From IMG/VR virus record IMGVR_UViG_3300020172_006270, positions 159,269 to 223,268 of that record: a stretch of 64,000 bases of DNA, one strand, 5' to 3'. The notes under the pieces are model-generated. The model was not told the DNA's origin. It made no database searches and saw only the letters and a list, made by a program, of their open reading frames with translations. The stretch's first letter is position 1; every line of letters starts with the position of its first letter. Positions 35,379 to 55,017 of the stretch are shown here, piece by piece. A program made the translations under genes and the position numbers.

Positions 35379-35465
35379 AATTTATCCCTCTCTAATTAAG
35401 TAAAGTACCGGCAGGTACAATGCTAGTTATTAAGGTGAATGTGTTTTTTCTACCAAAGGACCGTA

Positions 35466-37389: not shown

Positions 37390-38118
37390 TTACTTACTTG
37401 GTTGGAGTATGTAATCTTTTGGATAGACCCCTTGTGGGCCATTTCTATCTACAATTGGAATCTCCGGTACTATTGGTCGGTATTTTTGTGGCACAATGTC
37501 GTTGTCGGCATACACCACACAAATCCACCCATCCCAACGACGGTTAAATTCTTCCATAGTCCAAGTGCGAATCTTGAGCGAACTATCGCTGTTGTTGATG
37601 TACTTGACTATTCCCTTTTGTTCGTCGTAATGCACCAAGGTCATTGCGTGACCTGGGACTGCGAACAAACAACCACGTCTTTCTTGGACAACTGACTTGA
37701 TGATTAAACTACGATCAGACCTACTTGTTGTCTGTTCGTATCTCACCCGTAGTTGTTTTAGTTTAGTGGCGGCACTGCTTGGACTAGCATAGCTTTTGCA
37801 ATCTGCTAAGTCAGTCATGTTGATTAGTTTTGGTTCTTCAGCGTATCGTCCGCAAGTTTCAAGCGAACACCATACACACTGAATTCCCGTCTTGTTGAAG
37901 ACACGATCCTTCATTGGGATCGGCACCATTACATCGGTGAGGTCTTCGTCCGCTTCTCCTTCATACTCAGCTACAGGATTCTGTACTGGAATGCCAGGAT
38001 TTGGATTTGGATATTGATGATTGGTAGTTTGTCCACGCAAAGTGTGTTTTGGAAGCGTGATTGCAACGCTGCTCAAAGCCACAACTGCGCAGGCTAAAAC
38101 CGCAAGCAACTTCTTCAT
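37390..38118 (-). CDS. Secreted papain-fold (C39-like) cysteine peptidase
   Basis: Signal peptide; QCVWCS, GHAMTLV, YINNS; SD AGGAGG. Confidence 0.65.
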   Translation of the reverse strand: MKKLLAVLACAVVALSSVAITLPKHTLRGQTTNHQYPNPNPGIPVQNPVAEYEGEADEDLTDVMVPIPMKDRVFNKTGIQCVWCSLETCGRYAEEPKLINMTDLADCKSYASPSSAATKLKQLRVRYEQTTSRSDRSLIIKSVVQERRGCLFAVPGHAMTLVHYDEQKGIVKYINNSDSSLKIRTWTMEEFNRRWDGWICVVYADNDIVPQKYRPIVPEIPIVDRNGPQGVYPKDYILQPSK

Positions 38119-38136
38119 GAGCCTCCTGCTCGTGCG

Positions 38137-38769
38137 TTAGTTGTTTACGTTCAGATACTCCTTATAAAAGACAAGTTCTCCAGGGGCCAGCAGCAAATAC
38201 TTTCGCCACATTAGCCAGAACTTCCATTGTCTTTTCATATACTTACAAATGAGATCACGTTGCTCATCTGCAAGGCTCGCCTCCGAACGATATACTGAAG
38301 ATATATAGCCCTGGCAGGACGATAAATGCGGGGTATAGATGCGAACGAACTGCTTCCAGAGCCAGTTTATCCGCCTTTTGGTGTGAAGTGTGCTTTCTGT
38401 CGTGTTTTCGTAGTAGTAACCATACAACTCAGGAGACATCGGTTGTCTAAATGAGTTGTGGTGTGAACTGATGGATTCTTGGTGATATGAAAGCAGCGAA
38501 TGGTTTGGCAATATAGTTGCCGGGTGATTGAAGACTCTATTCTTCTCTATTCGACATTCAGTCATGAATGGTAGCGCTTGCTCCTCCGAACACTGACTTA
38601 GATGCCAGTGCTTTATTGAGTAGTGATCGCTTGGCTTAAATTCCTCACAAATGGTGACGACTACCTTTTGGTAGTCGTCACCATTTGTATAGAGGAACAA
38701 AGAAGACGGAACGACTAGCCACTCTTTAATGAGATCGGTGCGGATTAAGTATTCAAGCGCAGGAGTCAT
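38137..38769 (-). CDS. Hypothetical protein
   Basis: 210-aa ORF filling the gap in a co-oriented run. Confidence 0.6.
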   Translation of the reverse strand: MTPALEYLIRTDLIKEWLVVPSSLFLYTNGDDYQKVVVTICEEFKPSDHYSIKHWHLSQCSEEQALPFMTECRIEKNRVFNHPATILPNHSLLSYHQESISSHHNSFRQPMSPELYGYYYENTTESTLHTKRRINWLWKQFVRIYTPHLSSCQGYISSVYRSEASLADEQRDLICKYMKRQWKFWLMWRKYLLLAPGELVFYKEYLNVNN

Positions 38770-38776
38770 TCATTAG

Positions 38777-39136
38777 TTACTCGTCATCGTCGTCATCATC
38801 GTCATCGTCGAAGTCATCATCATCGTCGTCATCGTCGTCGTCCCAATCGTCATCGTCGTAGTCGTCGTCTTCATCATCGTCGTCATCGAGATCATCCTCG
38901 TCGTCGTCATCTTCATCTTCATCCCAATCGTCATCGAGGTCGTCATCGTCCTCGTCGTCATCGAGATCGTCATCGTCTAAATCATCATCGTCGTCGTCCT
39001 CGTCGTCGTCATCGTCGTCTTCGAGGTCGTCATCTTCCCAATCTTCGTCATCATCGAGGTCGTCCTGGGCAAAGACAATACGATCCTCTTCAATATCGAA
39101 ATCGAGTTCACAATCGCTATAGTACAGGCCGCTCAT
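38777..39136 (-). CDS. Poly-aspartate acidic protein (119 aa; start revised to 39136)
   Basis: SD AAGGAG; about 95 C-terminal residues are D/E with sparse L/W/Y/F. Confidence 0.8.
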   Translation of the reverse strand: MSGLYYSDCELDFDIEEDRIVFAQDDLDDDEDWEDDDLEDDDDDDEDDDDDDLDDDDLDDDEDDDDLDDDWDEDEDDDDEDDLDDDDDEDDDYDDDDWDDDDDDDDDDFDDDDDDDDDE

Positions 39137-39188
39137 GGGTATTCTCCTTTTTTGATGGTGACGGCAATACATATCATAGGAGGAGCCT

Positions 39189-39620
39189 ATGAAAAAACTA
39201 CTGCTTTTTGCGTCTTTATGTTTACCAATTTTTGCAGGTTGCACCGCAGCCCCATTGCTTATCAGCCCAATTGTGACGGGTGTAATCATGTGGAAAGACG
39301 GTGAAGCTCACAAATATTATAACGAGGAAGCCCATACTCTGTATCGGGCTACGAAAACATCTTTGAAAGAATTGGATCATCCAATTATCAAAGAGGAACC
39401 CTACAGGGACGGCGGCTACTATATCGTTGCTGGTGAAGGTGATAAATTCAAGATCACCATCCGACAAGTAAAGCCGCACATCACTGAGGTCAAAATTCGC
39501 ATAAACTTCATGGGCGACAAGCCTTATGCGGAGTTGGTGTATCGCCAAATTGACTCAAACACCAACACCATCGACTTTGATGACCAAGGTAAACCAACAA
39601 AACGTAAACAAAGACGGTAA
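39189..39620 (+). CDS. Lipoprotein, DUF3568-like
   Basis: Lipobox FAGC; TEVKIRI..GD; SD AGGAGG. Confidence 0.7.
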   Translation: MKKLLLFASLCLPIFAGCTAAPLLISPIVTGVIMWKDGEAHKYYNEEAHTLYRATKTSLKELDHPIIKEEPYRDGGYYIVAGEGDKFKITIRQVKPHITEVKIRINFMGDKPYAELVYRQIDSNTNTIDFDDQGKPTKRKQRR

Positions 39621-39636
39621 GTCGGTCAATGGGTCT

Positions 39637-41373
39637 TTAGCAGACTTTTCTTGACGCACTGCTGCCATATTTATACGTTGTTCTTCCTCCGGCCCTGACA
39701 GTGGTATAACAGCCAACTTTCGGGGCCGGAGTCGTTGGTACAGGGTCACAATCGCATGATCTAGGCTTGCAATTGGCATTGTGGCAGGCAACACAGCCGG
39801 AATTATTGGCTGGCTTCCACGGTTTGCCATATTCTGGGGCATTCGGATCACAATAGTTGGGCTTACCACAGGTGCAAACAATTTGCTTACGCATGAGCTT
39901 GCCATGACGGTTCTCGAACAGAGCGGAATCATGTTCGCCGACCAAGCCGCCATCATTCAATATACGCAGGCAGTTATATGCTGCGTCCAGAATTTCTCCC
40001 TCATGGGATTCCGATACGCCCACCAATTTATCATTGTCGAAATAATATGCCGTTTGATCTGGCACGGTAATTTCCAAGTCGAACAATGGATTCGCATCCA
40101 AAGCCGTCACTGGTCCGAGTTTATCTGACAACTTCATTGTCTTGGTCGTAAGCGTGCGGACAATTTTCATGTCGCCATACGTTTGAACTTCGTGCGGCTT
40201 TTTGATGTCTTTCAAAACGGACTCGACATCGGCATCTTCCAGCATCATTACACGTTGACGTAATATTCCTCTCTGAGAAAATACCTCACGCATAATAGTT
40301 TGATATTTCCCGCCCTCGGCGTGGTCAATTGCCAACATCTGTTGTGCAATGGCGTCGAACAAGCGAACCGTAGTCGGTGCCTGCACAACAGCCTTCAGCA
40401 AATAATTTGCAACAATGTCTCTGGACAATTTCATTCCATCACGAAGAACGTGGCCCTGGTTAATGTGAGCTACGCCAATTCGCACAACGATTTCCCAGAA
40501 GGCTCCAGTGAACACACGGCTAAAGCTGTGCGATTCGCCTAACAGTTGATCGTCTCGACCTTCGCTTGGCAATTTTTCTGGTTCTGTGTAGTTGAATACC
40601 TGGGTCATATCTCGCAAGCAATTTGGCAACTCGCCATTTTTGCCTTCTGTCAGGTGGTGCAATCCCGTTCCCATCTCTGCCGCAAGACGAGTTATGATAT
40701 TTGACTTCATTAAGTCGCCATTGGTTTCAATGATGGCGTGGTCAATTAACTGATCGTACTGTAAAGAAATCAACGCAGCCGTCATGTCGCCGAAGGCTTC
40801 ATGGAAAGCCCAAACCTCGGCAGCTTGAGTGTCCCACCAATCTGGTCGCAGGATGTCTAGGAACGCATGACCGAACTCATGAACAACGACCGGGCGTGCG
40901 TCACAAGCAAAGATGTTTTTGTTTATCTTTGGATCGCCAAAAAAGAAGAATCGTAGTGATCCACGATCATAATAAGCGTTAAGGTCTTTTCCAGCACGAG
41001 GCATCAGGATCAACGATTGTACCGCTGCCCAATTTCTGATTTGCTTTGGAGATTTGCTTGCCATATACACGAGAGCATCGTGTACCATAATCTTTAACGC
41101 CAGAGCTTGCTGCTGAAGACTTCCCAACGGATAGCCGCCACCCATTTCACCAATGGATCGCATGGCCAACATTGTGTCTGCTGGCTCCAGCACATTGACG
41201 ATCATGTTTGGGTAGGTTGGATCACTCAGGTAAACTTTAGTATTCGGGTCTGTTGGACGAGCCACTGGCACAGGACGTGGTTTTCTGTTGACAATAATTG
41301 CCTGAGCCGTCACTTCGTCTGATGTTTTTCCTAGACTTTTGATCCAGTTGATTATTCCTTTAAGCATCTTCAT
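39637..41373 (-). CDS. Gluzincin metalloprotease (M4/M36-like) with Cys-rich tail
   Basis: NAYY, VVHEFGH, AFHEAFGD, ESHSFS. Confidence 0.82.
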   Translation of the reverse strand: MKMLKGIINWIKSLGKTSDEVTAQAIIVNRKPRPVPVARPTDPNTKVYLSDPTYPNMIVNVLEPADTMLAMRSIGEMGGGYPLGSLQQQALALKIMVHDALVYMASKSPKQIRNWAAVQSLILMPRAGKDLNAYYDRGSLRFFFFGDPKINKNIFACDARPVVVHEFGHAFLDILRPDWWDTQAAEVWAFHEAFGDMTAALISLQYDQLIDHAIIETNGDLMKSNIITRLAAEMGTGLHHLTEGKNGELPNCLRDMTQVFNYTEPEKLPSEGRDDQLLGESHSFSRVFTGAFWEIVVRIGVAHINQGHVLRDGMKLSRDIVANYLLKAVVQAPTTVRLFDAIAQQMLAIDHAEGGKYQTIMREVFSQRGILRQRVMMLEDADVESVLKDIKKPHEVQTYGDMKIVRTLTTKTMKLSDKLGPVTALDANPLFDLEITVPDQTAYYFDNDKLVGVSESHEGEILDAAYNCLRILNDGGLVGEHDSALFENRHGKLMRKQIVCTCGKPNYCDPNAPEYGKPWKPANNSGCVACHNANCKPRSCDCDPVPTTPAPKVGCYTTVRAGGRTTYKYGSSASRKVC

Positions 41374-41421
41374 CTCCTTTTGTGTCAAAGACACTGGTAT
41401 ATATTCAGCGGAGGATGAATC

Positions 41422-41940
41422 ATGAGCAGAGAACAACAGATAAAAGAAGCCCGAACCATAGAAGCCATGAAAAAAGGTTACATGGGGTTAGAAGGCAAAT
41501 TTTGCAGCATTACCAAGTACATCGGCCAGCCGATATTCCATCAAGGAAGTCGTGTGTTTGAGCAGACATTTCTTGATGATCCTTATGAAATTCCTGAAGC
41601 TGACGATATTCCCATGATGGAAGAAGACCAAAATTCCTACGAAGTTGGTCAACAGTTTGATGGGTTGACTCGTGGAATGAATCTGACCATTTCAGTCGCT
41701 TATCATTTGCGTGAGATCACTTGCCGGTATGAAGGAAGAATTGTTTATAAGGAAATTGCTGGAGAACTCGAAGGGTATGCGCCTGAACCCGCCTGGGAAG
41801 ATAAAATAGAGATATTGGCTGCACTCGCCAGGAAGCTCGAACGGCAGGATCGACCAATTGAACGTCGTAAGCTAATCGAGTCAAATCAAAAGAAAAGAAC
41901 CGAAATACTTGAATACTTGAAGTTAAAATGGGGACTCTGA
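41422..41940 (+). CDS. Hypothetical protein
   Basis: TATATA box and SD GGAGG. Confidence 0.75.
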   Translation: MSREQQIKEARTIEAMKKGYMGLEGKFCSITKYIGQPIFHQGSRVFEQTFLDDPYEIPEADDIPMMEEDQNSYEVGQQFDGLTRGMNLTISVAYHLREITCRYEGRIVYKEIAGELEGYAPEPAWEDKIEILAALARKLERQDRPIERRKLIESNQKKRTEILEYLKLKWGL

Positions 41941-41986
41941 TGAAAGAGAAATTTGAAATGAGTATATATCGAAAAGGAGTGATCCT

Positions 41987-42346
41987 ATGAACGACATCCT
42001 GCGTGATCTATTGTTGAACGGGTTCATGATTTACCCGAACAATGGCAAATTTATCGTCAAAAAAGAAGCCGTCCCGTCAAACCTAATTGTCCTCAAAGAA
42101 ACTGAGTACGACAGTTACGAGCTTGCCGTTGAAGCTGCTGGAGCCATGCTTAATGCCCCTCAAATGGTGGATTGGGTAGTTATTGCCCGATACAACCGTG
42201 GGTTAGGGATTGAGTATAAAAACCTCCCGGATGTTCGGGCTGCAAACAAAGAACAGGCAAAAGCTCTTGCTGAGTGTATGGCAGGAGAACTATTAGGCGG
42301 TTCTACCGTGGTAATATCCGAAGTTAAAGTGCGTCTAAAAATTTGA
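41987..42346 (+). CDS. Hypothetical protein
   Basis: TATATA box and SD AAGGAG. Confidence 0.75.
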   Translation: MNDILRDLLLNGFMIYPNNGKFIVKKEAVPSNLIVLKETEYDSYELAVEAAGAMLNAPQMVDWVVIARYNRGLGIEYKNLPDVRAANKEQAKALAECMAGELLGGSTVVISEVKVRLKI

Positions 42347-42402
42347 CCTGACGAGGATACATAACTGAAGACCGTCTCTTCATTAAAAGAGGGAGAAAAA
42401 TT

Positions 42403-43020
42403 ATGGATGACTTCAAAACTGAGAAATGGACGCTGGATGATGGCCGTCGAGCCGAGCGTCGGGTCACGGAAAATACATCTGAAAATGGGCAGTCCGAACG
42501 AGTAGTCGAATTGCACGTCGAAGACGAGCGACCCCTAAGACTCCAGCAGCGTGTAGTGGAAAAGAGCAAGCCTATCGTTTATGAGCGTAAGGTTGAAACT
42601 CTTGACCCAAAGACAGGTAGTGTTGTAGAGCAGCGGGTTGAATCTATTGAACCCAAAGTGCAAATGCAGTTGGTGGAACATATCGCTTCTGCAAGCACCG
42701 TCGCCGCACAATCTATCCAAGATGACTGTGATTGCCACGTCACCAAAGATGAAATGATTGAAACCATTGTTGCCGCTATTAAGGCAACTCGTGAAACAGC
42801 CCCGGTTCGAGAAGTGGTCCGTGAGGCACCAGTTCAAACGGTTCGTGCGCAGTCTGCACCAAGTTCAGGCAGCTTTACAAGTGGCTTGAATAGTCTTGGT
42901 TTGGCTGATGAGATCGCAGGACGTGTCGATCCAAATGGGATGTCGATGATGGATAAAGTATTGCTAGGAGTCATTGCGGCTCAGATTGTGGGTCTTGGAT
43001 ACATAATTTTCTTTATGTAA
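42403..43020 (+). CDS. Tail-anchored membrane protein
   Basis: C-terminal hydrophobic helix; TACATA box, SD GGGAG. Confidence 0.75.
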   Translation: MDDFKTEKWTLDDGRRAERRVTENTSENGQSERVVELHVEDERPLRLQQRVVEKSKPIVYERKVETLDPKTGSVVEQRVESIEPKVQMQLVEHIASASTVAAQSIQDDCDCHVTKDEMIETIVAAIKATRETAPVREVVREAPVQTVRAQSAPSSGSFTSGLNSLGLADEIAGRVDPNGMSMMDKVLLGVIAAQIVGLGYIIFFM

Positions 43021-43233
43021 GCTAGGATATAACCATGCCGAATGAAGGCTGGCGGTCATTACTAGAGTCAACAACATGGGGAGGTTGTGCTATTACTTTG
43101 CATAACCTCCCCTTTGGGTATACTGAGATTGTTGTTGCATTGGCCAAGCCAGCATCTACTGTAATCGTTTCTCATTCTCGCTCATCGCTATATGAGCTTC
43201 AGAAATCTGCTGCCTCCTGGGACTTCCCAGATT

Positions 43234-44265
43234 TTAAGGCGTCACCAAGTCACTAGCCGTTAAAACATACGGCAATTCAATTGCAGTGCTGGGCGTTGTG
43301 TTGGCACCAGAATAAGTGTTGACGATCTTCTTTGCCAATTGTCCAGCCTTTGCTCCAGCTTGCCAAACAATCTGAGTCGTAATGCGACCCGATCCGTCGA
43401 GCGTGTTCTTTGTGAACATATAACTGCTGGTGCGGCCTCGCAGATGCGCCCAATCTCCCAACATGGTGCTGTAATCCAGACCATAATCTGTAACCATCTC
43501 ATACTCAGCAGCACTCAACCATTCGCCTGTTGTTCCAGCCGTTGTGACGTTGACTGGTACTGTGAAGGTGTTTGGTCCAGTCACAGTCACTACTCTGGAG
43601 CCATTCAGAGTGGGTGTGCTATTGGAGTCCACAAAGTAAACCACATCATTGTTGGAGAGTCCGTGAGCGACAGACGTGACGACTGATGGGTTGGCAGCAG
43701 TATTGCCCGTAATTGCGTGACTCAAACGAACAAGTCGCCCATTTGACTCTGGCGTAGCAAAACGATTTGCAATGGTGTCCTTCTCAAAATAAGAAGGAAT
43801 GTCAGCGACACCAGCAAACTTATTGAACTTGAGCTTTAGTTCTGCGCCCGTATTGGAAACATATGTGCGGAAAGCTGTATTTGATTTCTTTTGACGGATG
43901 AATAAACGGAATGGACCTCCTGCACCGCCCCGTGTTCCGTTGTCAATTCCTGCCGTGAACCAGTCAGAGAACCCAGCAGTAGAATTCAGGATGTCTCTGA
44001 TTTCAGATGCCAGTGTTGCCCCAGGTGTTGCCCCGGCCACATTTACAGTCAATGAAGCGAAGTTCTTGAATTCTGGATCGTAGGCGAAATTGATCGTAAG
44101 GTTCCCACTGGCCGAAAGGTCATAGGGTTCCATGTTCCAGGCGATAAATGCTTCGCCTTTGTTTTTGTTTGCTGGCACTTTGAAGGTAAGTGAATACCCT
44201 TTGTAATCGCCTAGCGTCCAGTAGCCTTCGTATTCGGCATCAAATAGATTTTGGAAGAATGACAT
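43234..44265 (-). CDS. Putative virion structural protein
   Basis: T/G/S-rich; ANPSVVTSVAHGLSNNDVV...LNG...VTGPNTFTV module typical of phage tail proteins. Confidence 0.65.
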   Translation of the reverse strand: MSFFQNLFDAEYEGYWTLGDYKGYSLTFKVPANKNKGEAFIAWNMEPYDLSASGNLTINFAYDPEFKNFASLTVNVAGATPGATLASEIRDILNSTAGFSDWFTAGIDNGTRGGAGGPFRLFIRQKKSNTAFRTYVSNTGAELKLKFNKFAGVADIPSYFEKDTIANRFATPESNGRLVRLSHAITGNTAANPSVVTSVAHGLSNNDVVYFVDSNSTPTLNGSRVVTVTGPNTFTVPVNVTTAGTTGEWLSAAEYEMVTDYGLDYSTMLGDWAHLRGRTSSYMFTKNTLDGSGRITTQIVWQAGAKAGQLAKKIVNTYSGANTTPSTAIELPYVLTASDLVTP

Positions 44266-44286
44266 TGTTACCTTTCAGTTCAAAAG

Positions 44287-44335
44287 AAAATACCCGTCTA
44301 GCTCGATGTATTTAGAGCGTGACGGGTATTTTTTT
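44287..44335. terminator. Long hairpin with TAAATA box in its loop
   Basis: aaaatacccgtc/gacgggtatttt stem. Confidence 0.65.
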
Positions 44336-44356
44336 GAGAAACTTACTGAGTAAGGT

Positions 44357-44659
44357 TTAAGCTCCTGATTCGATAATATCGAGAAGGGGCTTCCTGACCA
44401 GTGTGCTTTTGTTGGGGTTTAGCTTCCGAATGGGACTATCTGTTCGGAGCGAAACGCCCTTGGCAATACGATCACGCCTGTAGGTCTTCACTGGAGCTTT
44501 TCCAGCAGTTCTGATGGTTCTTCCTTCTCGCAGTTCATAACCACGGATAAATTCCTTGGTTTGTTCCACGACAAGCACTGTTCGACGCACTGGATGGGTA
44601 TGTGTACCCTTGTACCAGAAACGGGCAACCGGCATATTTTTGACTATTTCGTACTTCAT
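44357..44659 (-). CDS. Basic WYL-like protein (start revised to 44659)
   Basis: FWY...RTV...IRGYEL...KTYRRDRI. Confidence 0.5.
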   Translation of the reverse strand: MKYEIVKNMPVARFWYKGTHTHPVRRTVLVVEQTKEFIRGYELREGRTIRTAGKAPVKTYRRDRIAKGVSLRTDSPIRKLNPNKSTLVRKPLLDIIESGA

Positions 44660-44669
44660 CGTCGTTTCC

Positions 44670-45203: not shown

Positions 45204-45215
45204 TATTTTCCCTTT

Positions 45216-45647
45216 TTAGAGTCCACGCACGATTTGTTTGAAATGATCCAAGTCTTCACGGCTGGCTTGCACCTGTCCTTCGAGGAAGATTTCAAGCCAT
45301 GTTCCATCAACGCCGCCCAAGTCGTCGGCGTCTTTCATCCGTTGCACATAGTTATTGACGACTTCTTCTTCCATTGCAACAGCATATTCCATGATGTCTT
45401 TAGGGTCGGTGTATTTTCCGAAATCATTTGACTCAAAAGTGGCAACGCCACCCAAACCAATGATAACGTCTGAAAACTGCGACACATGCAGCATTTCTGA
45501 AGCTGCCTCTTTGAGAAACAACTCCTTGTATTCAGCACAATGCAGGCCAGTCACAGCGCTCGCATGATACAAGTAAAAACGTAAATGCTTCCATTCATTT
45601 TTGAGGTCGTCATTCAACATCTGAATCATCTTGTCTTTGTTCATCAT
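45216..45647 (-). CDS. Ferritin-like / bacterioferritin-family protein
   Basis: LNDDLKNE...Y, EMLH, LGG, EEEVVNNY, EDLDH. Confidence 0.85.
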   Translation of the reverse strand: MMNKDKMIQMLNDDLKNEWKHLRFYLYHASAVTGLHCAEYKELFLKEAASEMLHVSQFSDVIIGLGGVATFESNDFGKYTDPKDIMEYAVAMEEEVVNNYVQRMKDADDLGGVDGTWLEIFLEGQVQASREDLDHFKQIVRGL

Positions 45648-46775
45648 TTAATCCTTGTGAAAATGTACATCTTTGTGTCCGTGATCGTGCGTGTATTCCA
45701 TCTCCCGGAATCCACCATAATTGAACGATGGCTTGGTATCTGAATTGACGACTTTCCACGTCAATTCAAATCCATACTTTGCTACCTTCTCAATGCCAGA
45801 GAAATTGATTTTATCTGCTGTATCTCTCGGCGTGTGATAATTGTCGTGCATTCCAGTGTGCAAGAACGCAATTGGAACCTTCTTATTGTAGAAGCAAGCG
45901 TGATCGCTGCCACCACTGCTACGGCCTGTAATGCTCTTAGCAAATGAGTATTTTCCACTCAATTCCCCAATGATGCTCGACACGTCAGGAGAGCTTTCCC
46001 CTTCGTTGAAGGCAACGGCAGTGCGAGCTTTGCCCAAATATCCAACCATATCCATATTGAGCATGAATATATGCTTGCGAATATTGGGGTCGCCTTTCGG
46101 GAAAATAGGGTTGTCGCAATAATATCGTGACCCAATTAACCCCATTTCCTCGGCACTAAAAGACATAAAGACCACGGTTCTTTTGTTCTGACCACGCAGA
46201 GACGCAAAGGTTTTGGCTATTTGAAGCAAAGCCACCGTCCCTGAAGCGTTATCGTCAGCCCCAGGGTGAATTTTCCCGCCACCCGACCGGCTCATGGCTG
46301 GTCCCCAGCCAATGTGGTCCATGTGTGCGCCAACAACTACGATCTCATCTTTTAATTCGGTGCCTTCAATCCAGGCAATGATATTCTGCGTGAAATCATC
46401 ACCAGTTTCATTGTTCGGCCCAGGATTCATTCTTTTGATATTGAACTTTTGATATGCCGTATCGAGGCCGAAACTTTCATATATCTTTTTCAGATAATCG
46501 GCAGCGACAACATTTCCTTTTTTGCCCGACATTCGACCTTCAAGCTCGGCAGAACACAAATATTCTAAATGTTTTTGCAATTCGCTTTCAGATATATCTG
46601 CGATGGCTTCATCATAAGTCTTTTTGCGTGGCGGGTCCACGTCAGGTGGCGGCAAAGGCTCGACCGGAGGAACGAATTCTTCTTGAACAATGGGCGGCGG
46701 GACATCACGTTTGCTGATATACACAGCAAGCAAAATGATTCCCAGCGACAGTACAACGAGAGGGAGCTTACGCAT
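45648..46775 (-). CDS. Membrane-anchored M28 peptidase (start revised to 46775)
   Basis: GAHMDH, GADDNASG, AEEMGLIGS, NMDM, SDH, YHTPRD. Confidence 0.92.
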   Translation of the reverse strand: MRKLPLVVLSLGIILLAVYISKRDVPPPIVQEEFVPPVEPLPPPDVDPPRKKTYDEAIADISESELQKHLEYLCSAELEGRMSGKKGNVVAADYLKKIYESFGLDTAYQKFNIKRMNPGPNNETGDDFTQNIIAWIEGTELKDEIVVVGAHMDHIGWGPAMSRSGGGKIHPGADDNASGTVALLQIAKTFASLRGQNKRTVVFMSFSAEEMGLIGSRYYCDNPIFPKGDPNIRKHIFMLNMDMVGYLGKARTAVAFNEGESSPDVSSIIGELSGKYSFAKSITGRSSGGSDHACFYNKKVPIAFLHTGMHDNYHTPRDTADKINFSGIEKVAKYGFELTWKVVNSDTKPSFNYGGFREMEYTHDHGHKDVHFHKD

Positions 46776-46869
46776 GGCAAACCCTGTTTTATTAGTGTGT
46801 TGGCTATATATTCTGTCCAAACAACCTACAAGGAAGCGAGGACTCCAACTTAATTAGAAAAGGAATATA

Positions 46870-48741
46870 ATGGATCAAGCCGTATTTTTCAAGAGCAAAC
46901 GTGACTCTGTTTGGCGGGGCAAACACAAAACCCTGGAAGAATTCTATAAGAGTGGTGGGAAGATACTTAAACGAGGGGAGGGCAAAAAGAGTCGTCTCCA
47001 ATATGATCCCGACTATTACACTCTCGACAAGTATGAACTTGAAATTGATCCCGATGAGCCGCTGGAAAACTTCGATACTTACGATTCGGCCCGTCGTCAA
47101 AAAGAGATCATCAAGTGCTGCAACAGCTTCGCTTATTTCTGCCACAAATATGTGAAGATTCTTCACCCGATGGATGGTTTGATTCCTTTCGTATTATACA
47201 ACTATCAGCGAAAGGTTATCCAAGAATACGAAAACCACCGATTTAACATCATCAGTAAGTTTCGTCAAGGGGGACTGACGACAGTAACTTTGCTGTGGGG
47301 CATGTGGCGCTGCATGTTCCAACTCGACCAACAGATCATGATCTTGGGTCGAACTGACCGTGACGCCACAGATATTGGCATGATGGTGGATCGTTCCATT
47401 GAGAACTTCCCAGATTGGTTGAAGCCAATAAAAGATGGTAAGTGGAATGACCACATGAAGATGTTCACGGACACCGGGTCGGCCTTAAAATTTCACTCTC
47501 CTGAAGCTGCTCGTGGTAAGTCCGTTACATTCTTGATTGTGGACGAAGCTGCGTTCATTGATGACATGGACAAGCACTGGAAAGCTATGTGGCCTATCCT
47601 TTCGACGGGTGGTGGTTGCACCCTTGTATCCACGGTTAATGGTCTGGGCAACTGGTATGAACAAACCTACCACGAAGCACAAGAAAAGCAAAACCGATTC
47701 AATATCATCGACTTGGATTATTGGGAACATCCCGACTACAACGACGATGAATGGGTTAAAGAACAAAAGGCACAACTCGGCGAGAAAGGCTTCTTGCAGG
47801 AAGTGTTGCGTGAGTTCCTTGGCTCCGGTGACACTTACTTCTCTGCTAAGGTCATCACACAACTCACAGAGCAAACCAGAAACAATTACCCTAGCCGCAA
47901 GTTATTCCCGAAATGGGTCAACAAGGCAGGCCGTATTGCTGTGTTGGAAAGTGAAGACCACAACAAGGGTGCTATGTGGGTCTGGAAAGAACCAATTGAT
48001 GGCCATGAATATATCATTGGCGCTGACGCCTCTGAAGGCCAAGGCAACAATAACGACAATTGCTGTTTTCAGGTAATTGATACAGCAACTTTGGAACAAG
48101 TGGCCGAGTTTTACTCCAATATCATTGTGCCTCACGAATTCGCTCAGGTGCTTAATGAAGTGGGCATTTATTACAACAATGCTCTGATTGTTGTCGAAAA
48201 CATGGGTCCAGGCGGGGCTGTTCTAAGCAACCTGCAATTCACCTTGTTTTACGAGAACCTTTATTACGAAAGCCTTAAATCGGCCAACGTAAAACCGGGC
48301 ATCAAAATTGGTCAAGTAAACCGATCTCTATATTTGGAATCTCTCCAAAATCGGCTATTGAACCAAACTGTGCGTATTAACAGTATGCGATTTGTTATGG
48401 AACTTCAGACTTTTGAGTACAACCCTGTCACTCGCAAGGCTGAAGCCCAAAAAGGCAAGCACGACGACGCTATTATGTCTATGTGTATGGCCCTTTATGT
48501 TCGTGATTCCATGTTGCGAGACATACCTATGGGGGCAGAGATTCCGAAAGAAGTAACGGCCACGCTAAAAGCTCAGGTATATGAAGAAATCAAACGTGAA
48601 TTGATGGAAGGAAGACCAGAAGATTTCCTTATGGATGATGAAATAGACCTTTTAGCGCCCGACAAAGATACTGTCATGCCCGGTGTTATTTTCAACATTG
48701 AGCGTCGGAACGATAGACTGCTTAAAGAATTTGGGTGGTAA
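46870..48741 (+). CDS. gp17: Terminase large subunit, T4 gp17-like
   Basis: LYNYQ, KFRQGGLTT, IVDEAAF, VSTVNG, GADASEG, VENMGPG, HDDAIM. Confidence 0.95.
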   Translation: MDQAVFFKSKRDSVWRGKHKTLEEFYKSGGKILKRGEGKKSRLQYDPDYYTLDKYELEIDPDEPLENFDTYDSARRQKEIIKCCNSFAYFCHKYVKILHPMDGLIPFVLYNYQRKVIQEYENHRFNIISKFRQGGLTTVTLLWGMWRCMFQLDQQIMILGRTDRDATDIGMMVDRSIENFPDWLKPIKDGKWNDHMKMFTDTGSALKFHSPEAARGKSVTFLIVDEAAFIDDMDKHWKAMWPILSTGGGCTLVSTVNGLGNWYEQTYHEAQEKQNRFNIIDLDYWEHPDYNDDEWVKEQKAQLGEKGFLQEVLREFLGSGDTYFSAKVITQLTEQTRNNYPSRKLFPKWVNKAGRIAVLESEDHNKGAMWVWKEPIDGHEYIIGADASEGQGNNNDNCCFQVIDTATLEQVAEFYSNIIVPHEFAQVLNEVGIYYNNALIVVENMGPGGAVLSNLQFTLFYENLYYESLKSANVKPGIKIGQVNRSLYLESLQNRLLNQTVRINSMRFVMELQTFEYNPVTRKAEAQKGKHDDAIMSMCMALYVRDSMLRDIPMGAEIPKEVTATLKAQVYEEIKRELMEGRPEDFLMDDEIDLLAPDKDTVMPGVIFNIERRNDRLLKEFGW

Positions 48742-48745
48742 ACGA

Positions 48746-49708
48746 ATGTCGTTCATGAAATACCTTGAAAATAAAGCTCGACCAAGCATCCTTGTCGTCA
48801 TGGACGAATACAAGGAAAAGCTGCACGCTGATATGGCGAGCCTTATGCTCAAACCAGACAAACAACTTATCGAAGCTCGTAAAAACATCGTCAACATCAA
48901 AGAGGTCGCCAGAACACTATCAGAACTGGCGTATCCGTTATCTGACGAGTTCAAGATGGCAATACGCACAGGTGATCCTAAAAGAGTAAATCACGCCCAC
49001 ATGACCTTCCGTCGCTGGGTGGATTATCACAACGCAGATCGTGCCTTGTCTGACAAGATTGAGACAGCAATGTTTCAATATCAGACCAAGTTGTATGGAA
49101 AAGAATTTGGTCCAGAAGAAGCTGATGCGGTTGCCAAATCTTCTTTATCTGAATCAACGGCTATTCTCGACCAGATGGCCCACAATATAAATTTGGCAAT
49201 ATCCAAAATCCCTACATGGCATAATCATAAAATTGTCATAGAGGCCATTTGCCCAGAAGTGGGATGGGTGGTTTCAGAAGCCAAAATCACCGTAGGCGAA
49301 GCGTTCCATGCAGTTTTCTTGTACGAACACACGTCAACGGGATTTAAGGCGAAATTGCTCACAGAAGAGGACATGCCTGCAAGTCTTAAAGTTGACATGC
49401 AAGATTTGCTGGCAAAGCTAAGAACCAACCCTAAATACAACAAGATATTGACTTTGTATATGACAAGGCCAATATCCGAACGTCGATATTTTGAAATTGC
49501 AAAAAGAGATTTGTCACTTGGAATTGAAGCGGTTTTGCCGAGCCACATCACCTTGGCGACAAGTCCTTTGCCTGGAGATTCCGATGTATGGAAAGTCCGG
49601 GTTGAAGAAAAATATCTCAAAGAATATCTCCATGAGGGAGATGTAAAAGAATATCAAGTCATCGGGGAAGAAGCCCCAATGCGCTGGATTGAAAGGATGA
49701 GTAAATGA
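48746..49708 (+). CDS. Hypothetical protein with CTS-like N-terminus (start revised to 48746)
   Basis: MSFMKYLENK just after terminase stop. Confidence 0.7.
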   Translation: MSFMKYLENKARPSILVVMDEYKEKLHADMASLMLKPDKQLIEARKNIVNIKEVARTLSELAYPLSDEFKMAIRTGDPKRVNHAHMTFRRWVDYHNADRALSDKIETAMFQYQTKLYGKEFGPEEADAVAKSSLSESTAILDQMAHNINLAISKIPTWHNHKIVIEAICPEVGWVVSEAKITVGEAFHAVFLYEHTSTGFKAKLLTEEDMPASLKVDMQDLLAKLRTNPKYNKILTLYMTRPISERRYFEIAKRDLSLGIEAVLPSHITLATSPLPGDSDVWKVRVEEKYLKEYLHEGDVKEYQVIGEEAPMRWIERMSK

Positions 49709-50043
49709 AAACAAACACAAACGAGACAAAAGCGGCTTTGCAGAAAGCATTAGCGCAAGTACCGCAAGACCATGCTTTGTCAGAAGTACGTTATCACATA
49801 CGGGCCGCTCTAGGAAAGCTGGAGACTGTTGAGAAGAAACGGGATCGTCGTGAGGTTAACTCGGAACGTCGTGAATTGGCACGGGGCCAAGGCAATGCGT
49901 ATTCGTATGATCCATTCCGGGCAATTCAGGCTATTGACGAAGAAATCGCCAAAGAAAAAGCCAAGATTGAAAATATTCAACGCCGCCGTACACAAGATGA
50001 CGAGAAAGATGACGGCGATGAGCTTCAAACAGTTCTTGGTTAA
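49705..50043 (+). CDS. Small coiled-coil protein
   Basis: Overlaps upstream stop by 4 nt; charged helical composition. Confidence 0.7.
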   Translation: MKTNTNETKAALQKALAQVPQDHALSEVRYHIRAALGKLETVEKKRDRREVNSERRELARGQGNAYSYDPFRAIQAIDEEIAKEKAKIENIQRRRTQDDEKDDGDELQTVLG

Positions 50044-50575
50044 TGAAGGACGTAGAAACAAATACGACTACTCTTCATTATTGGTCGAACCGCCAGAAGA
50101 AATTGCAGACAATGTAATTTCTTGGGGGTGGGATCATGTACCTAATGAATCCGTGTTTCTTGATCCTAAAGACCCCAGCTTTGGTCGAGAAGATGACCCT
50201 CACATTACTTTAATCTATGGCATTCACACAGACATCTTAAAAGAAGTGTCTGATCTGTTTGTTGACGAGAAAGAGTTTGAGTGTAAGTTGGGCAAGATTG
50301 ATATGTTTACGAAAAGCGATAAATTCGATGTGCTAATCGTAAGCGTGGAATGCGAAGAGTTACACAGGCTAAATCGTAAGATGCGAAGAAATTTAGAAGC
50401 CACTGAAAGCTATCCTGTTTATGTGCCTCACGTTACAATTTGCTACCTGAAAAAAGGTCAAGGCAAACAATACATTGGCAATGACGTTTTTGTAGATGAA
50501 AAGTTTACGATCAACAAGATTTTCTTTTCTTCAAAGACTGGCGAAAAAACTCCAATAAAGTTAGGTGCAAAATGA
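50018..50575 (+). CDS. 2H phosphoesterase, Acb1/T4 gp57B-like (start revised to 50018)
   Basis: Two HxT motifs PHITLIYG and YVPHVTICY; MSFKQFLVNE. Confidence 0.8.
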   Translation: MSFKQFLVNEGRRNKYDYSSLLVEPPEEIADNVISWGWDHVPNESVFLDPKDPSFGREDDPHITLIYGIHTDILKEVSDLFVDEKEFECKLGKIDMFTKSDKFDVLIVSVECEELHRLNRKMRRNLEATESYPVYVPHVTICYLKKGQGKQYIGNDVFVDEKFTINKIFFSSKTGEKTPIKLGAK

Positions 50576-51087
50576 AAAAAGATTGGCATGGCTTAGTTAA
50601 GATTCTCGAAATCCAACACGTCCGAGATGGCAAGGTGATCTGGGAAGAGAAAAATCTACTCAACACTTTGCATATTGGTGGAGAAATGTTTATGTTGACC
50701 TGTGCATTTGACAGCAGCCCAGGAACATACCCACCAGCAAACTATTACTTCGGACTCGATAATCGAGGGGCAATCACCGTTGATGATCTCATGACGGATA
50801 TTGCCGATGAGCCATCTGGCAATGGATATTTGCGGCAGGCTGTAAGCTCGTCAAATCAATTTACAATTGACATTGTAAGTGGCGTTTACCGAGCCACCAG
50901 CCAGATCGTTACCTTTAGTGCAACAGGCGCAGGCTGGGGTCCAGTATCCAATTTGTTCATGGCGACTAGCGCAGATGGGTCCGGCATTTTATTGGCCAGT
51001 AATCCACTATCAAATTCAATTACATTGACAAATGGCGATGCCATCAATATGCGCATGGCCCTAGCCCTCAGAGATGTGCCAGCTTAA
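50572..51087 (+). CDS. Putative tail/baseplate structural protein
   Basis: NGYLRQAV, VTFSATGAGWGPV, ITLTNGD pattern. Confidence 0.65.
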   Translation: MKKDWHGLVKILEIQHVRDGKVIWEEKNLLNTLHIGGEMFMLTCAFDSSPGTYPPANYYFGLDNRGAITVDDLMTDIADEPSGNGYLRQAVSSSNQFTIDIVSGVYRATSQIVTFSATGAGWGPVSNLFMATSADGSGILLASNPLSNSITLTNGDAINMRMALALRDVPA

Positions 51088-51533
51088 CTCATGGTGTCTT
51101 GAAGCAATTCGTCAGGCTTAATTTCAACAAAATGCACCACATTAAATTTGTGAATGCCTTGTTGAACTTTATTGTATTGCCTGAACTCCAACCATTCAGA
51201 ACCGCCGTCTTTCACATCCAACAGTCTTTCCGATGTGCCTAGCTGAACTGCTACAACATCCTGGACTTCTTCAGGCACATTGTCGCCACCAAGCTCCAAT
51301 TTCTGCGGCAGATTGATGTTGTAGCCTTCTTCCATAGGCATGATTGCCTTGTTGATAGCTTCGTTCGTCAATTTGTACTTACAGAACATTTCTTTAGCAG
51401 GCTCGGAAGTGGTGCCACGATGGAACCATACCGGCACACTCACGCCCATAACTTCAAGAGATTCGCCAGAATGCAGCTTATAGCGTTGCTCTCGGTTCAA
51501 ATAGATGTAATGCGAAATAGTCAATGTTGCCAT
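51084..51533 (-). CDS. Hypothetical protein
   Basis: SD GAGG; TATATA box. Confidence 0.7.
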   Translation of the reverse strand: MATLTISHYIYLNREQRYKLHSGESLEVMGVSVPVWFHRGTTSEPAKEMFCKYKLTNEAINKAIMPMEEGYNINLPQKLELGGDNVPEEVQDVVAVQLGTSERLLDVKDGGSEWLEFRQYNKVQQGIHKFNVVHFVEIKPDELLQDTMS

Positions 51534-51589
51534 TCTTTGTTCCTCACGAATATATAGATGGTAGGAGTCTTCATGCTAAGGAGTAGCAA

Positions 51590-52489
51590 ATGTTCAAATT
51601 ATCTTCTATTCTTGTCTTGTTGGTTAGTTTCCTGGCCCCGATTGCCAGCGCCGAAACGCCCTCTGTGTATTCATATGATCCATTAGACAATATGCCGATT
51701 ATGGAGCGTCGGCCTACTGGCTTTGCAGGCATGGCTCCAATCGAGCAACGTGGTCCAGAGTTCCGTAAGTTTCTCGCTGCATCTGTCAAAATCAGCGTGG
51801 GCGGCGGTTCTGGTTCTGGAACCATTGTTTATTACGATGCAGCTAAAAATCTCGCTTACGTCGCATCTTGCGGGCATATGTGGAGTCAAGGAACCATGTC
51901 CGTAGAAGAAGGCAAGCGTCGAAATATGACTTGCAAAGTAATCACTTGGTATCATAACGAAAAGAAGCTGGACTCTCCCAAGAGTTACAATGCCAATGTA
52001 ATATTCTATAGCTATATCAGCGGTCAGGATACGTCACTTGTGACTTTTACTCCAGATTGGCAACCTGAGTATTTCCCCATTGCTCCTGTGAACTACGAGT
52101 ACAAGGCTGGTCGCCATGCTCACTCATTGGGATGTGATGGCGGCAATGAGGTCGCACACTATGACATTGAAATAATTGGACTTGGTGGCGGTGATTTGGT
52201 TACGAATCAAAACAGCCCACGCCCAGGACGTTCTGGTGGTGGGCTGATGGATGACGACGGATATTACATCGCAACTTGCTGGGGAACTCAATATCGTGAT
52301 GGAAGCGGCAAGGGATATTTTACGCCTCTATCTGCCATTCATGGATATTGGAACAAGCAAAGTGGATATGAGTTCTTGTTGAACCAGAAGCCGGGCGGCA
52401 CAGCAGCACGCCAGATTCCGGTCAAAGACCGCAGTGGTCCTCAAGGCACATATAAGCCAGAATATATTTTGCTTCCAGGTGGACGTTAA
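51590..52489 (+). CDS. Secreted trypsin-like (S1) serine protease
   Basis: Signal peptide ending ASA; GSGT, SCGH, DTSL, PGRSGGGL. Confidence 0.85.
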   Translation: MFKLSSILVLLVSFLAPIASAETPSVYSYDPLDNMPIMERRPTGFAGMAPIEQRGPEFRKFLAASVKISVGGGSGSGTIVYYDAAKNLAYVASCGHMWSQGTMSVEEGKRRNMTCKVITWYHNEKKLDSPKSYNANVIFYSYISGQDTSLVTFTPDWQPEYFPIAPVNYEYKAGRHAHSLGCDGGNEVAHYDIEIIGLGGGDLVTNQNSPRPGRSGGGLMDDDGYYIATCWGTQYRDGSGKGYFTPLSAIHGYWNKQSGYEFLLNQKPGGTAARQIPVKDRSGPQGTYKPEYILLPGGR

Positions 52490-55014: not shown

Positions 55015-55017
55015 GGC

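What the first reader, a model, noticed from the sequence alone, without database searches (positions are those of the whole stretch)
37390..52489. Two unrelated secreted proteases end in the same 21-aa C-terminal tag
C39-like peptidase ends IPIVDRNGPQGVYPKDYILQP-SK (~37393..37461) and the S1 protease ends IPVKDRSGPQGTYKPEYILLP-GGR (~52415..52486): 13/21 identical, no gaps, different catalytic folds, 14 kb apart. Both also have a signal peptide and Pro-containing pro-segment. Established: C-terminal tags shared by unrelated exported enzymes usually mark sorting systems (LPXTG, PEP-CTERM, T9SS CTD), but this one has no TM helix and matches none I know. Inference: an undescribed sorting or docking signal.
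Basis: partly seen in the sequence, partly recalled or inferred. Interest (0 to 1): 0.75.

Follow-up and report, generated by a model that had tools for sequence, protein, structure and literature searches.

The report
Shared C-terminal tag on phage peptidases
A conserved 21-residue tail ends three structurally unrelated exported protein-cutting enzymes in a clade of uncultivated freshwater giant phages; it matches no known sorting signal and is most likely a new docking or recognition peptide whose receptor is still unknown.

Summary
Protein A (37390-38118, minus strand; C39-like cysteine peptidase fold) and protein B (51590-52489, plus strand; chymotrypsin fold) share only their last about 23 residues: 13 of 21 identical, no gaps, BLASTP E 2e-6.

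The tail is not a chance match or a recent DNA copy. It is kept at the very C-terminus of nearly all listed homologues of both families. It forms an island of conservation behind a variable linker. Synonymous sites are scrambled.

A profile of the tail, searched against 1.84 billion proteins, found 52 hits. 48 belong to three peptidase families: A, B and a third, caspase-like family. Three more are short fragments and one is a false positive. The family members whose context was read sit on huge-phage contigs. Almost all family A and B members have signal-peptide-like N-termini. No non-peptidase protein, and hence no ordinary bacterial protein, carries the tail. No Pfam or NCBIfam model matches it.

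The tag is therefore new and specific to phage peptidases, not a copy of a host sorting signal. My best reading (confidence 0.4) is a tethered docking peptide that brings the soluble peptidases to one shared partner in the cell envelope. That partner probably belongs to the same exported accessory module, which is missing as a block from a close relative. The receptor was not identified, and a cis-acting prosegment role is not excluded.

The parts
37390..38118 (-). Gene A: exported C39-like (papain-fold) cysteine peptidase, 242 aa. Cys81 and His157 are invariant in the family.
   Evidence: ORF; 237 homologues; invariant columns; AF2 pLDDT 89.9; Foldseek hits to C39/PCAT peptidase domains, E 5e-5.
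38053..38118 (-). Signal-peptide-like N-terminus of A (MKKLLAVLACAVVALSSVAITL...).
   Evidence: Hydrophobicity scan; 109 of 120 family members have such an N-terminus, and 9 of them contain a lipobox-like motif.
37399..37461 (-). Tag of A: IPIVDRNGPQGVYPKDYILQP, followed by SK and the stop codon.
   Evidence: 51.3 bits; family logo: Tyr at -4 in 99%, Pro at 0 in 100%.
51590..52489 (+). Gene B: exported chymotrypsin-fold serine protease, 299 aa. His96, Asp147 and Ser215 (in GRSGGG) are invariant.
   Evidence: ORF; Trypsin_2 below the cut-off; 559 homologues; invariant columns; AF2 pLDDT 89.5; Foldseek chymotrypsin fold.
51590..51652 (+). Signal peptide of B (MFKLSSILVLLVSFLAPIASA, then ETP).
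   Evidence: 108 of 118 family members have a hydrophobic N-terminus.
52415..52477 (+). Tag of B: IPVKDRSGPQGTYKPEYILLP, followed by GGR (52478-52486) and the stop codon.
   Evidence: (48.3 bits).
35977..37044 (-). M14 zinc carboxypeptidase with an N-terminal signal anchor and no tag. It belongs to the same exported accessory module.
   Evidence: Pfam PF00246, 1.8e-27; core in G001-G004; absent from LR756511.1; found fused to a tagged S1 domain in P0290.
39189..39620 (+). DUF3568 lipoprotein (lipobox LPIFAGC), a candidate envelope partner.
   Evidence: Pfam PF12092, 2.4e-11; present in 30 of 52 A loci; present in G001-G003 but not in G004 or LR756511.1.
45648..46820 (-). M28 aminopeptidase-type peptidase with an N-terminal signal anchor (probable start MRKLPL at 46775) and no tag. 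Same module.
   Evidence: Pfam PF04389, 3.4e-40; core in G001-G004; absent from LR756511.1.
7919..8743 (+). Second exported S1 protease, 274 aa, without a recognisable tag (ends ...LPFVKLKLKEYEYQLPE).
   Evidence: Pfam Trypsin_2, 4.5e-13; sequence; no tag-HMM hit. A weak S1-like match in LR756511.1 (E 0.0039 to the B-family profile) shares near-identical N-terminal motifs with it by eye and also has no tag; no alignment was run.

Best explanation
The tail is a short linear docking or recognition peptide. A variable linker tethers it to the C-terminus of the phage's exported endopeptidases: the C39-like enzyme, the S1 enzyme and, in relatives, caspase-like enzymes. After Sec export, the tail binds one shared partner in the cell envelope. 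That partner is most likely a phage-encoded member of the same exported accessory module: the LolA/LolB-like protein, the DUF3568 lipoprotein, or the membrane-anchored M14 or M28 peptidase. Binding would hold the different peptidases at one place, next to the anchored exopeptidases. Its many prolines and its invariant final Pro would let the peptide survive among these proteases.

Shown: the tag exists, is under purifying selection, sits on three unrelated catalytic folds, is confined to phage peptidases and lies at the C-terminus. The exported module is gained or lost as a block.

Inferred: binding in trans, the identity and location of the partner, and the co-localisation function.
For: 1. 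The same motif ends three unrelated folds. These are C39-like, chymotrypsin and caspase-like C14: family D scores 2.4e-9 against Pfam C14, and family C is linked to D by hhalign at 85% probability. The motif also ends an M14-S1 fusion. One motif is unlikely to fit three different surfaces in cis.
2. The layout is domain, then variable linker, then conserved tag. Column entropy is 0.94 / 2.27 / 1.49 bits in family A and 1.13 / 2.18 / 1.70 bits in family B. This is typical of a tethered linear motif.
3. Tyr at -4 and Pro at 0 are essentially invariant. The tag lies 0-6 residues from the end in the listed A and B members.
4. Purifying selection, not gene conversion, maintains it. Only 4 of 13 identical residues share a codon, and 36 of 63 nucleotides match. 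Other genomes show the same.
5. Each complete genome carries 2-3 tagged peptidases. The genomes range from 35% to 53% GC, so their hosts probably differ.
6. A profile search of 1.84e9 proteins gave 52 hits: 14 in family A, 23 in B, 11 in C, three short fragments and one false positive. No non-peptidase family carries the tag. This argues for a partner that travels with the phage.
7. All six signal-peptide-bearing core ORFs (LolB-like, M14, A, DUF3568, M28, B) are missing from LR756511.1, whose major capsid protein is 80% identical. 86 of 114 core ORFs are present there. Fisher p = 1.4e-4.
8. Within genomes, the last six residues of the A and B tags are more alike than in permuted pairs (4.05 vs 3.35, p = 2e-4). 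Several lineage-specific variants are shared: FVPRP/FVPRP, KIPMP/KIPMP, FIPLP/FIPIP, YILMP/YILMP.
Against: - No receptor was identified, and no complex could be modelled.
- The A-B covariation is not significant once catalytic-domain divergence is controlled (partial Mantel r = 0.19, p = 0.10).
- AF2 gives the tails pLDDT 60-83. That is higher than expected for a free tail and may mean cis packing.
- DUF3568 is missing from G004, which has three tagged proteins.
- The block absence rests on a single genome.
- The host is unknown.
Confidence: 0.4

Rival explanations
1. The tail is a cis-acting C-terminal prosegment. It lies on or in its own enzyme as a pseudo-substrate, latency peptide or folding aid until it is removed or displaced. 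Alternatively, it is simply a proline-rich cap that protects the C-terminus from the co-exported exopeptidases.
For: - AF2 places the tails with pLDDT 83/83/78 in A and 63/79/60 in B, without regular secondary structure.
- Secreted proteases commonly carry prosegments (established knowledge).
- All proteases bind extended peptides in their clefts, so one peptide could in principle fit several folds.
- The invariant final Pro and the K/R-rich trailing residues fit trimming by the M14 carboxypeptidase that stops at Pro. This is inference.
Against: - One 21-residue sequence would have to fit the clefts or surfaces of three unrelated folds with different catalytic chemistries.
- A variable linker separates it from the domain.
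- A mere cap would not need 21 conserved residues, including the D-[RK] pair.
- The second exported S1, M14 and M28 do without it.
Confidence: 0.22
2. The tail is a secretion or sorting signal read by a transport machine. It takes the periplasmic intermediates across or onto the outer membrane. This is the first reader's 'sorting' option, comparable to a T9SS CTD or the C-terminal extensions of some secreted proteases.
For: - It is strictly C-terminal, on Sec-exported enzymes only.
- It is shared by unrelated cargo.
- Some members are lipoproteins, so the proteins are envelope-targeted.
- Huge phages are reported to encode outer-membrane and sorting proteins (preprint 10.64898/2026.10.24.761521).
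Against: - No non-peptidase protein in 1.84e9 representatives carries it, so no host machine with native substrates is indicated.
- It is far shorter than a T9SS CTD, and it has no TM helix or basic tail.
- No curated sorting-domain model matches.
- It is conserved in phages of 35-53% GC, which probably have different hosts.
- No phage outer-membrane channel was recognised among the exported proteins of this genome.
Confidence: 0.15
3. The tail is read in the cytoplasm before export. It would be the C-terminal ligand of the phage's OGT-like TPR-glycosyltransferases, or of a TPR chaperone, marking the peptidases for modification.
For: - Two cytoplasmic TPR+GT9-like proteins (G000:142602-144305 and 54228-55589) have TPRs most similar to those of OGT and SPINDLY.
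- The first is adjacent to the exported LolB-like gene in 4 of 5 genomes, and neither has a homologue in LR756511.1.
- TPR domains classically bind C-terminal peptides, as in PEX5-PTS1 and Hsp70 EEVD (established knowledge).
- A GT9-like ORF starts at B's stop codon.
- Cytoplasmic glycosylation of exported proteins has precedent in HMW1C and Aah/TibC (established knowledge).
Against: - The evidence is purely associative.
- The GT9-like ORF is next to B in only 5 of 80 loci.
- No sequon or modified residue is known.
- Such glycosyltransferases may act on quite different targets.
Confidence: 0.1
4. The tail is a capsid-targeting or cargo-loading peptide that packs the peptidases into the phage head, like the T4 capsid-targeting sequence or encapsulin cargo-loading peptides.
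For: - A lies beside the portal, prohead protease, scaffold and capsid genes in most loci, and B lies near the large terminase.
- HK97-fold shells are known to load cargo through short terminal peptides (established knowledge).
Against: - Over 90% of members have Sec-type hydrophobic N-termini, and a few contain lipobox-like motifs, so the proteins leave the cytoplasm where heads assemble.
- A dedicated prohead protease is present.
Confidence: 0.03
5. The end of the tail is released by proteolysis as a diffusible peptide signal. Lineage-specific variants would then act as 'pherotypes', as in the arbitrium and Phr systems, where the mature peptide is the C-terminus of a secreted precursor and the receptor is a TPR protein.
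For: - Lineage-specific last-five variants are shared by A and B.
- Peptidases and a carboxypeptidase that could trim the tail are co-encoded.
- TPR proteins are present.
Against: - No import system or TPR transcription factor was seen.
- The precursors are large enzymes, not small pro-peptides.
- The whole 21-residue tag is conserved, not just the end.
- The covariation is weak after phylogenetic control.
Confidence: 0.03

Closest known systems
Dockerin-cohesin (cellulosome) docking modules
   Same: A C-terminal module is shared by catalytically unrelated secreted hydrolases and brings them onto one scaffold. Family C even has an EF-hand just before the tag.
   Different: A dockerin is a folded duplicated calcium-binding domain of about 70 aa. 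The tag is 21 aa, is not an EF-hand (Pro and Gln occupy loop positions 5 and 6) and is predicted without secondary structure. No cohesin-like partner was found.
T9SS C-terminal domains, and the LPXTG, PEP-CTERM and GlyGly-CTERM sorting signals
   Same: They are C-terminal signals on Sec-exported, otherwise unrelated enzymes, often proteases.
   Different: A T9SS CTD is a 70-100 aa beta-sandwich. The sortase- and exosortase-type signals have a motif, a TM helix and a basic tail. The tag has none of these features, matches no NCBIfam or Pfam model and occurs on no host protein.
PTS1-PEX5 and other C-terminal-peptide/TPR pairs
   Same: A short extreme-C-terminal peptide on unrelated enzymes is read by a single receptor. 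The phage encodes TPR proteins.
   Different: PTS1 is a tripeptide that needs the free carboxylate. Here 0-6 variable residues follow the motif in most members, and the motif is 21 residues long. The phage TPR proteins are cytoplasmic glycosyltransferase fusions with no shown link to the tag.
Encapsulin cargo-loading peptides and the T4 capsid-targeting sequence
   Same: A short terminal peptide is shared by unrelated cargo enzymes of a phage or phage-like shell, and the genes lie in the head module.
   Different: That cargo is cytoplasmic. A and B carry export signals.
OMP C-terminal beta-signal and DegS/DegP-activating peptides (YxF-COOH)
   Same: These are periplasmic recognition of an aromatic-rich C-terminal peptide, read by BamA or by PDZ domains.
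   Different: Those signals need a terminal aromatic residue with a free carboxylate. The tag ends in Pro plus variable residues.
C-terminal extensions or propeptides of secreted bacterial proteases (aqualysin, halolysin CTE, D. nodosus subtilases)
   Same: They are a C-terminal extension on a signal-peptide-bearing protease (PMC3480457 and PMC3158780 were listed; only their abstracts were seen).
   Different: Those are family-specific folded domains of 100 aa or more, not a 21-aa motif shared across folds.

Membership tests
Sortase (LPXTG-type) cell-wall sorting signal | An LPXTG-like motif followed by a hydrophobic TM segment and a basic tail. | tested here: not met
   The tails end ...YILQPSK and ...YILLPGGR. 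Only 2-3 residues follow the motif and there is no hydrophobic stretch. No NCBIfam hit.
PEP-CTERM, GlyGly-CTERM, IPTL-CTERM and other exosortase/rhombosortase signals | A short motif plus a TM helix plus an Arg/Lys cluster at the C-terminus, with a cognate sorting enzyme in the genome. | tested here: not met
   No TM helix. No NCBIfam model matched whole proteins or isolated tails at E <= 1. No exosortase-like gene was noticed among the annotated ORFs, but a genome-wide search for one was not done.
T9SS C-terminal domain (type A or type B) | A folded beta-sandwich of about 70-100 aa at the C-terminus (TIGR04183 or TIGR04131). | tested here: not met
   The tag is 21 aa behind a 12-aa variable linker. 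AF2 shows no strands after residue 212 in A or 274 in B. No NCBIfam hit.
Dockerin | Two 22-residue calcium-binding loop-helix repeats, with a cohesin partner. | tested here: not met
   No Pfam dockerin or EF-hand hit in A or B. The loop positions do not fit an EF-hand (sequence). No partner is known.
Peptidase family C39 / C39-like (protein A) | A papain-like fold with a catalytic Cys on the N-terminal helix and a His on a beta-strand. | tested here: met
   Foldseek top hits are 3zua, PCAT1 and the ComA peptidase domains (E 5e-5 to 1e-3). Cys81 and His157 are invariant in 119 sequences. No Pfam sequence match. Double-glycine specificity was not tested.
Peptidase family S1 (protein B) | A double beta-barrel chymotrypsin fold with a His-Asp-Ser triad and a GxSGG motif. 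| tested here: met
   Foldseek finds at least 500 chymotrypsin-fold hits at E <= 1e-3. H96, D147 and S215 in GRSGGG are invariant. Pfam Trypsin_2 scores 21.8 bits, below the 27.6-bit cut-off.
Peptidase clan CD (caspase-like), tag-bearing families C and D of relatives | A caspase fold with a His-Gly ... Cys dyad. | tested here: inconclusive
   Family D matches Pfam Peptidase_C14 at 2.4e-9. Family C aligns to D across the GHG and SC motifs (hhalign probability 85%), but it has no PDB or Pfam match of its own. No structure was predicted.
A host-recognised sorting tag of any kind | Native host proteins carry the same signal. | tested here: not met
   The tag profile against 1.84e9 representatives gave 52 hits at E <= 1e-3. 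All are peptidase families A, B or C, short fragments, or one false positive. Very divergent host versions could be missed.

The most novel reading that the evidence does not exclude
These phages build a multi-peptidase machine in the host envelope. The 21-aa tag acts as a minimal 'dockerin' that plugs endopeptidases of three different folds onto one phage-encoded receptor, beside membrane-anchored amino- and carboxypeptidases. This would be a cellulosome-like assembly principle for proteolysis, carried as a transferable accessory module.
Probability: 0.22. Interest if true: 0.8.

Novelty: new variant of a known kind. Interest (0 to 1): 0.62.

Why it matters
Short terminal peptides that address unrelated enzymes to one place underlie protein sorting and modular enzyme complexes, and they are useful tools. 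Here a previously undescribed peptide marks only the exported peptidases of a widespread, uncultivated clade of freshwater jumbo and huge phages.

If the tag docks them to a common receptor, two things follow. It would show how phages organise a set of six or more peptidases in the host envelope, whether for lysis, nutrient release or receptor removal. It would also supply a compact, protease-resistant tag-receptor pair.

The block-wise presence or absence of the exported module also gives a handle on what these puzzling phage peptidases are for.

Tried and rejected
- **Chance or recent duplication: rejected.** HMM scores, conservation in homologues and scrambled codons all argue against it.
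- **More tagged proteins in this genome: none.** A regex and an HMM over all six frames found nothing further. The second S1's tail (...KEYEYQLPE) only vaguely resembles the tag and is not significant.
- **Known sorting or docking domains: no match** in Pfam or NCBIfam. An ESM Atlas feature search with the tail gave chance-level scores of 0.80 or less.
- **Homologues in cultured phages: none** for A, B, the LolB-like protein or DUF3568 among 50,697 GenBank phage records.
- **Host from bacterial genomes: failed.** B-family hits lie in MAGs of unrelated phyla (Chloracidobacterium, Bacteriovoracaceae, Neisseriaceae, an archaeon), i.e. probably mis-binned phage contigs. The window has no tRNAs.
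- **Double-glycine idea: rejected.** B ends E-Y-I-L-L-P-G-G-R, which mimics a C39 leader cleavage motif. But GG is not conserved across family B (26 of 112 members end exactly at the Pro, and many others in a single Gly plus Arg) and is absent from family A.
- **Internal IPMKDR in A (residues 67-72) resembling the tag's first half:** it is part of the folded core (pLDDT 97), and the match has E 1.2. Treated as chance.
- **Covariation as proof of a shared partner:** the permutation test is positive, but the partial Mantel test is not. It is kept only as a hint.
- **Literature:** no paper describing the tag was found.
- **Complex modelling, and inspection of tail contacts in the AF2 models,** were not possible with the tools.

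Full report
**Setting.** The window is the last 64 kb of a single 223,268-bp contig. It is a T4-like jumbo phage. It has a large terminase (46870-48741), a Gp20-type portal with an intein (32835-35378), a prohead protease, a scaffold candidate and a major head protein. Near-identical DNA occurs in freshwater, lake and sediment metagenomes. The nearest public record is the uncultured 595-kb phage LR756511.1, with the large terminase 53% and the capsid protein 80% identical.

- Protein A (37390-38118, minus strand, 242 aa) ends IPIVDRNGPQGVYPKDYILQP-SK.
- Protein B (51590-52489, plus strand, 299 aa) ends IPVKDRSGPQGTYKPEYILLP-GGR.
- The two tails share 13 of 21 residues without gaps. BLASTP of the whole proteins finds nothing else significant (E 2e-6 for the tail).
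- AF2 models are confident: pLDDT 89.9 for A and 89.5 for B.
- A has the C39/PCAT papain-like peptidase fold, with Cys81 and His157 invariant.
- B has the chymotrypsin fold, with His96, Asp147 and Ser215 invariant.
- Both start with Sec-type signal peptides.

**The tail is a selected module, not chance or a recent copy.**
- Family A has 237 metagenomic homologues and family B has 559, on contigs of up to 600 kb.
- Nearly every listed member ends with the motif. The consensus is [IL]-P-I-x-D-[RK]-N-x-x-Q-G-x-[YF]-x-x-[DE]-Y-I-[LP]-x-P, followed by 0-6 residues that are K/R-rich in A and G/R-rich in B.
- Tyr at -4 is kept in 99-100% of members and the last Pro in 100%.
- The tag is a conservation island behind a variable 12-residue linker. 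Column entropy for domain, linker and tag is 0.94, 2.27 and 1.49 bits in A, and 1.13, 2.18 and 1.70 bits in B.
- At the DNA level only 4 of the 13 shared residues use the same codon, and 36 of 63 bases match. Other genomes show the same. The likeness is therefore maintained at the protein level.
- A tag HMM scores 51 and 48 bits on A and B, and at most 9 bits on anything else in the genome.

**Who else carries it.**
- In 2.29 Mb of related viral contigs (132 loci), the HMM hits only A members (43) and B members (63). The remaining members have divergent versions, a truncated end, or in one case (L058) no tag.
- A tag profile searched against 1.84 billion protein representatives returned only 52 proteins at E <= 1e-3. 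They are 14 A, 23 B and 11 of a new family C, plus three short fragments and one repeat-protein false positive.
- Family C has a signal peptide, invariant GHG and QLSC motifs, an EF-hand and then the tag.
- A lipoprotein of a 459-kb phage (family D) matches Pfam Peptidase_C14 (2.4e-9) and also ends in the tag. Family C aligns to it at 85% hhalign probability.
- P0290 fuses an M14 domain to a tagged S1 domain, and P0267 has two S1 domains plus the tag.
- Family C and P0290 lie in phage contexts.
- Complete genomes carry two or three tagged peptidases each: A+B here, A+B+C, B+B'+C, A+B+D, and A+B with divergent tags.
- So the tag marks exported peptidases of three unrelated folds and nothing else.
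- Over 90% of A and B members have hydrophobic signal-like N-termini. A few members contain lipobox-like motifs, and some relatives are clear lipoproteins.

**What it is not.**
- No Pfam or NCBIfam model matches it, including the curated C-terminal sorting domains.
- It has no TM helix and is far shorter than a T9SS CTD or a dockerin.
- No non-peptidase protein, and hence no ordinary bacterial protein, carries it.
- B-family hits in bacterial MAGs are scattered over unrelated phyla and look like mis-binned phage contigs.
- GenBank phages have no homologue of A or B.
The 'undescribed docking signal' half survives.

**Genomic behaviour.**
- A and B are syntenic core genes. A sits by the portal, ORF675 and the prohead protease in about 43 of 52 loci. 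B sits by ORF149 and the primase in 75-79 of 80 loci.
- I fetched four complete relatives of 459-572 kb and 35-53% GC. Against them, 114 open frames of this genome are shared with at least three.
- Six of these have signal peptides: a LolA/LolB-like protein (Atlas look-alikes DUF4292, LolB and LolA), M14, A, the DUF3568 lipoprotein, M28 and B.
- All six are absent from LR756511.1, which keeps 86 of the 114 and the surrounding synteny. Fisher p = 1.4e-4.
- The exported peptidase set therefore behaves as one accessory module.
- An exported thioredoxin and two cytoplasmic OGT-like TPR+GT9 proteins are absent from that genome too. One of the TPR+GT9 genes is adjacent to the LolB-like gene in 4 of 5 genomes.

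**Mechanism.**
- One 21-residue sequence sits on three folds, behind a variable linker, always at the end, and only in phage peptidases. This is best explained by recognition in trans by one shared factor that travels with the phage.
- The tagged enzymes are mostly soluble endopeptidases, although some relatives are lipoproteins. The untagged M14 and M28 carry N-terminal anchors. This suggests the tag supplies localisation.
- The proline content and the invariant terminal Pro would protect the peptide from the co-exported amino- and carboxypeptidases. The K/R-rich trailing residues could be trimmed by M14. Both points are inference.
- Within genomes, the last six residues of the A and B tags are more alike than in shuffled pairs (p = 2e-4). 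Striking variants are shared, and their codons partly differ.
- However, the signal is not significant after controlling for catalytic-domain divergence (partial Mantel r = 0.19, p = 0.10). It is only a hint.
- Against a pure trans model, AF2 gives the tails pLDDT 60-83. I could not inspect contacts, so a cis prosegment or pseudo-substrate role keeps about a fifth of the probability.
- Outer-membrane secretion, pre-export recognition by the TPR-glycosyltransferases, capsid loading and a released peptide signal are lesser rivals.

**Verdict.** The tag is real, conserved and previously undescribed. It is a new variant of the known kind 'short C-terminal address or docking peptide'. It is restricted to the exported peptidases of an uncultivated huge-phage clade. 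Its receptor and function are inferred, not shown.

Noticed in passing
window 32835-35378 (-): The T4-type portal gene (Pfam Portal_T4) is interrupted by an intein (Intein_splicing, residues 113-326; C...HNC boundaries visible).
   Followed up: partly
window 7919-8743, 28405-29088, 35977-37044, 37390-38118, 39637-41436, 45648-46820, 51590-52489: The window encodes an unusually large peptidase set: a second exported S1, the prohead protease, M14, the C39-like enzyme, a 599-aa HEFGH zincin-like protein with a Cys-rich C-terminus and no signal peptide, M28, and the S1 protease B.
   Followed up: partly
G000:C1:142602-145366 (outside the window); G001:380426-383377; G003:383846-386466; G004:1668-4406: An exported LolA/LolB-like protein and a cytoplasmic OGT-like TPR+GT9 glycosyltransferase form a gene pair. 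The pair is conserved in 4 of 5 genomes despite 35-53% GC.
   Followed up: partly
LR756511.1 (locus L135 and the whole record): This 595-kb clade member (capsid protein 80% identical) keeps the head and packaging synteny. It lacks every signal-peptide-bearing core gene: M14, A, DUF3568, M28, B and the LolB-like protein. It is a natural deletion or non-acquisition of the exported module.
   Followed up: yes
window 49829-50575 (+): This ORF matches 2',5' RNA ligase / Acb1 (anti-CBASS) 2H-phosphoesterase families (E 2.5e-9 and 3.2e-8). It is a possible counter-defence gene.
   Followed up: no
window 52489-53133 (+): A GT9-like ORF (weak Pfam hit) starts at the last base of B's stop codon, which suggests translational coupling. 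The adjacency is seen in only 5 of 80 related loci.
   Followed up: partly
window 38777-39289 (-) and 39189-39620 (+): A 170-aa ORF whose C-terminal two-thirds is almost pure Asp/Glu overlaps the DUF3568 lipoprotein gene on the other strand by about 100 bp. It is found in only 5 of 52 loci and may not be a real gene.
   Followed up: no
window 45216-45647 (-) and 50572-51087 (+): A ferritin-like protein lies next to M28, and a protein like podophage fibre Gp80 lies next to ORF149 and B. Both are core in relatives and have no homologue in LR756511.1.
   Followed up: no
proteins P0272, P0251, P0291, P0265; G003 A and B (loci L130, L139): In some relatives the tag is followed by 20-60 extra low-complexity residues. 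This may reflect read-through, frameshifts or stop-codon reassignment in those phages.
   Followed up: no
window 35439-36077 (+): A conserved 212-aa ORF next to the portal (43 of 52 loci; also in LR756511.1) has no family match. Its N-terminus (KILFVCSHLHSGSS) is faintly sulfotransferase-like by eye only.
   Followed up: no
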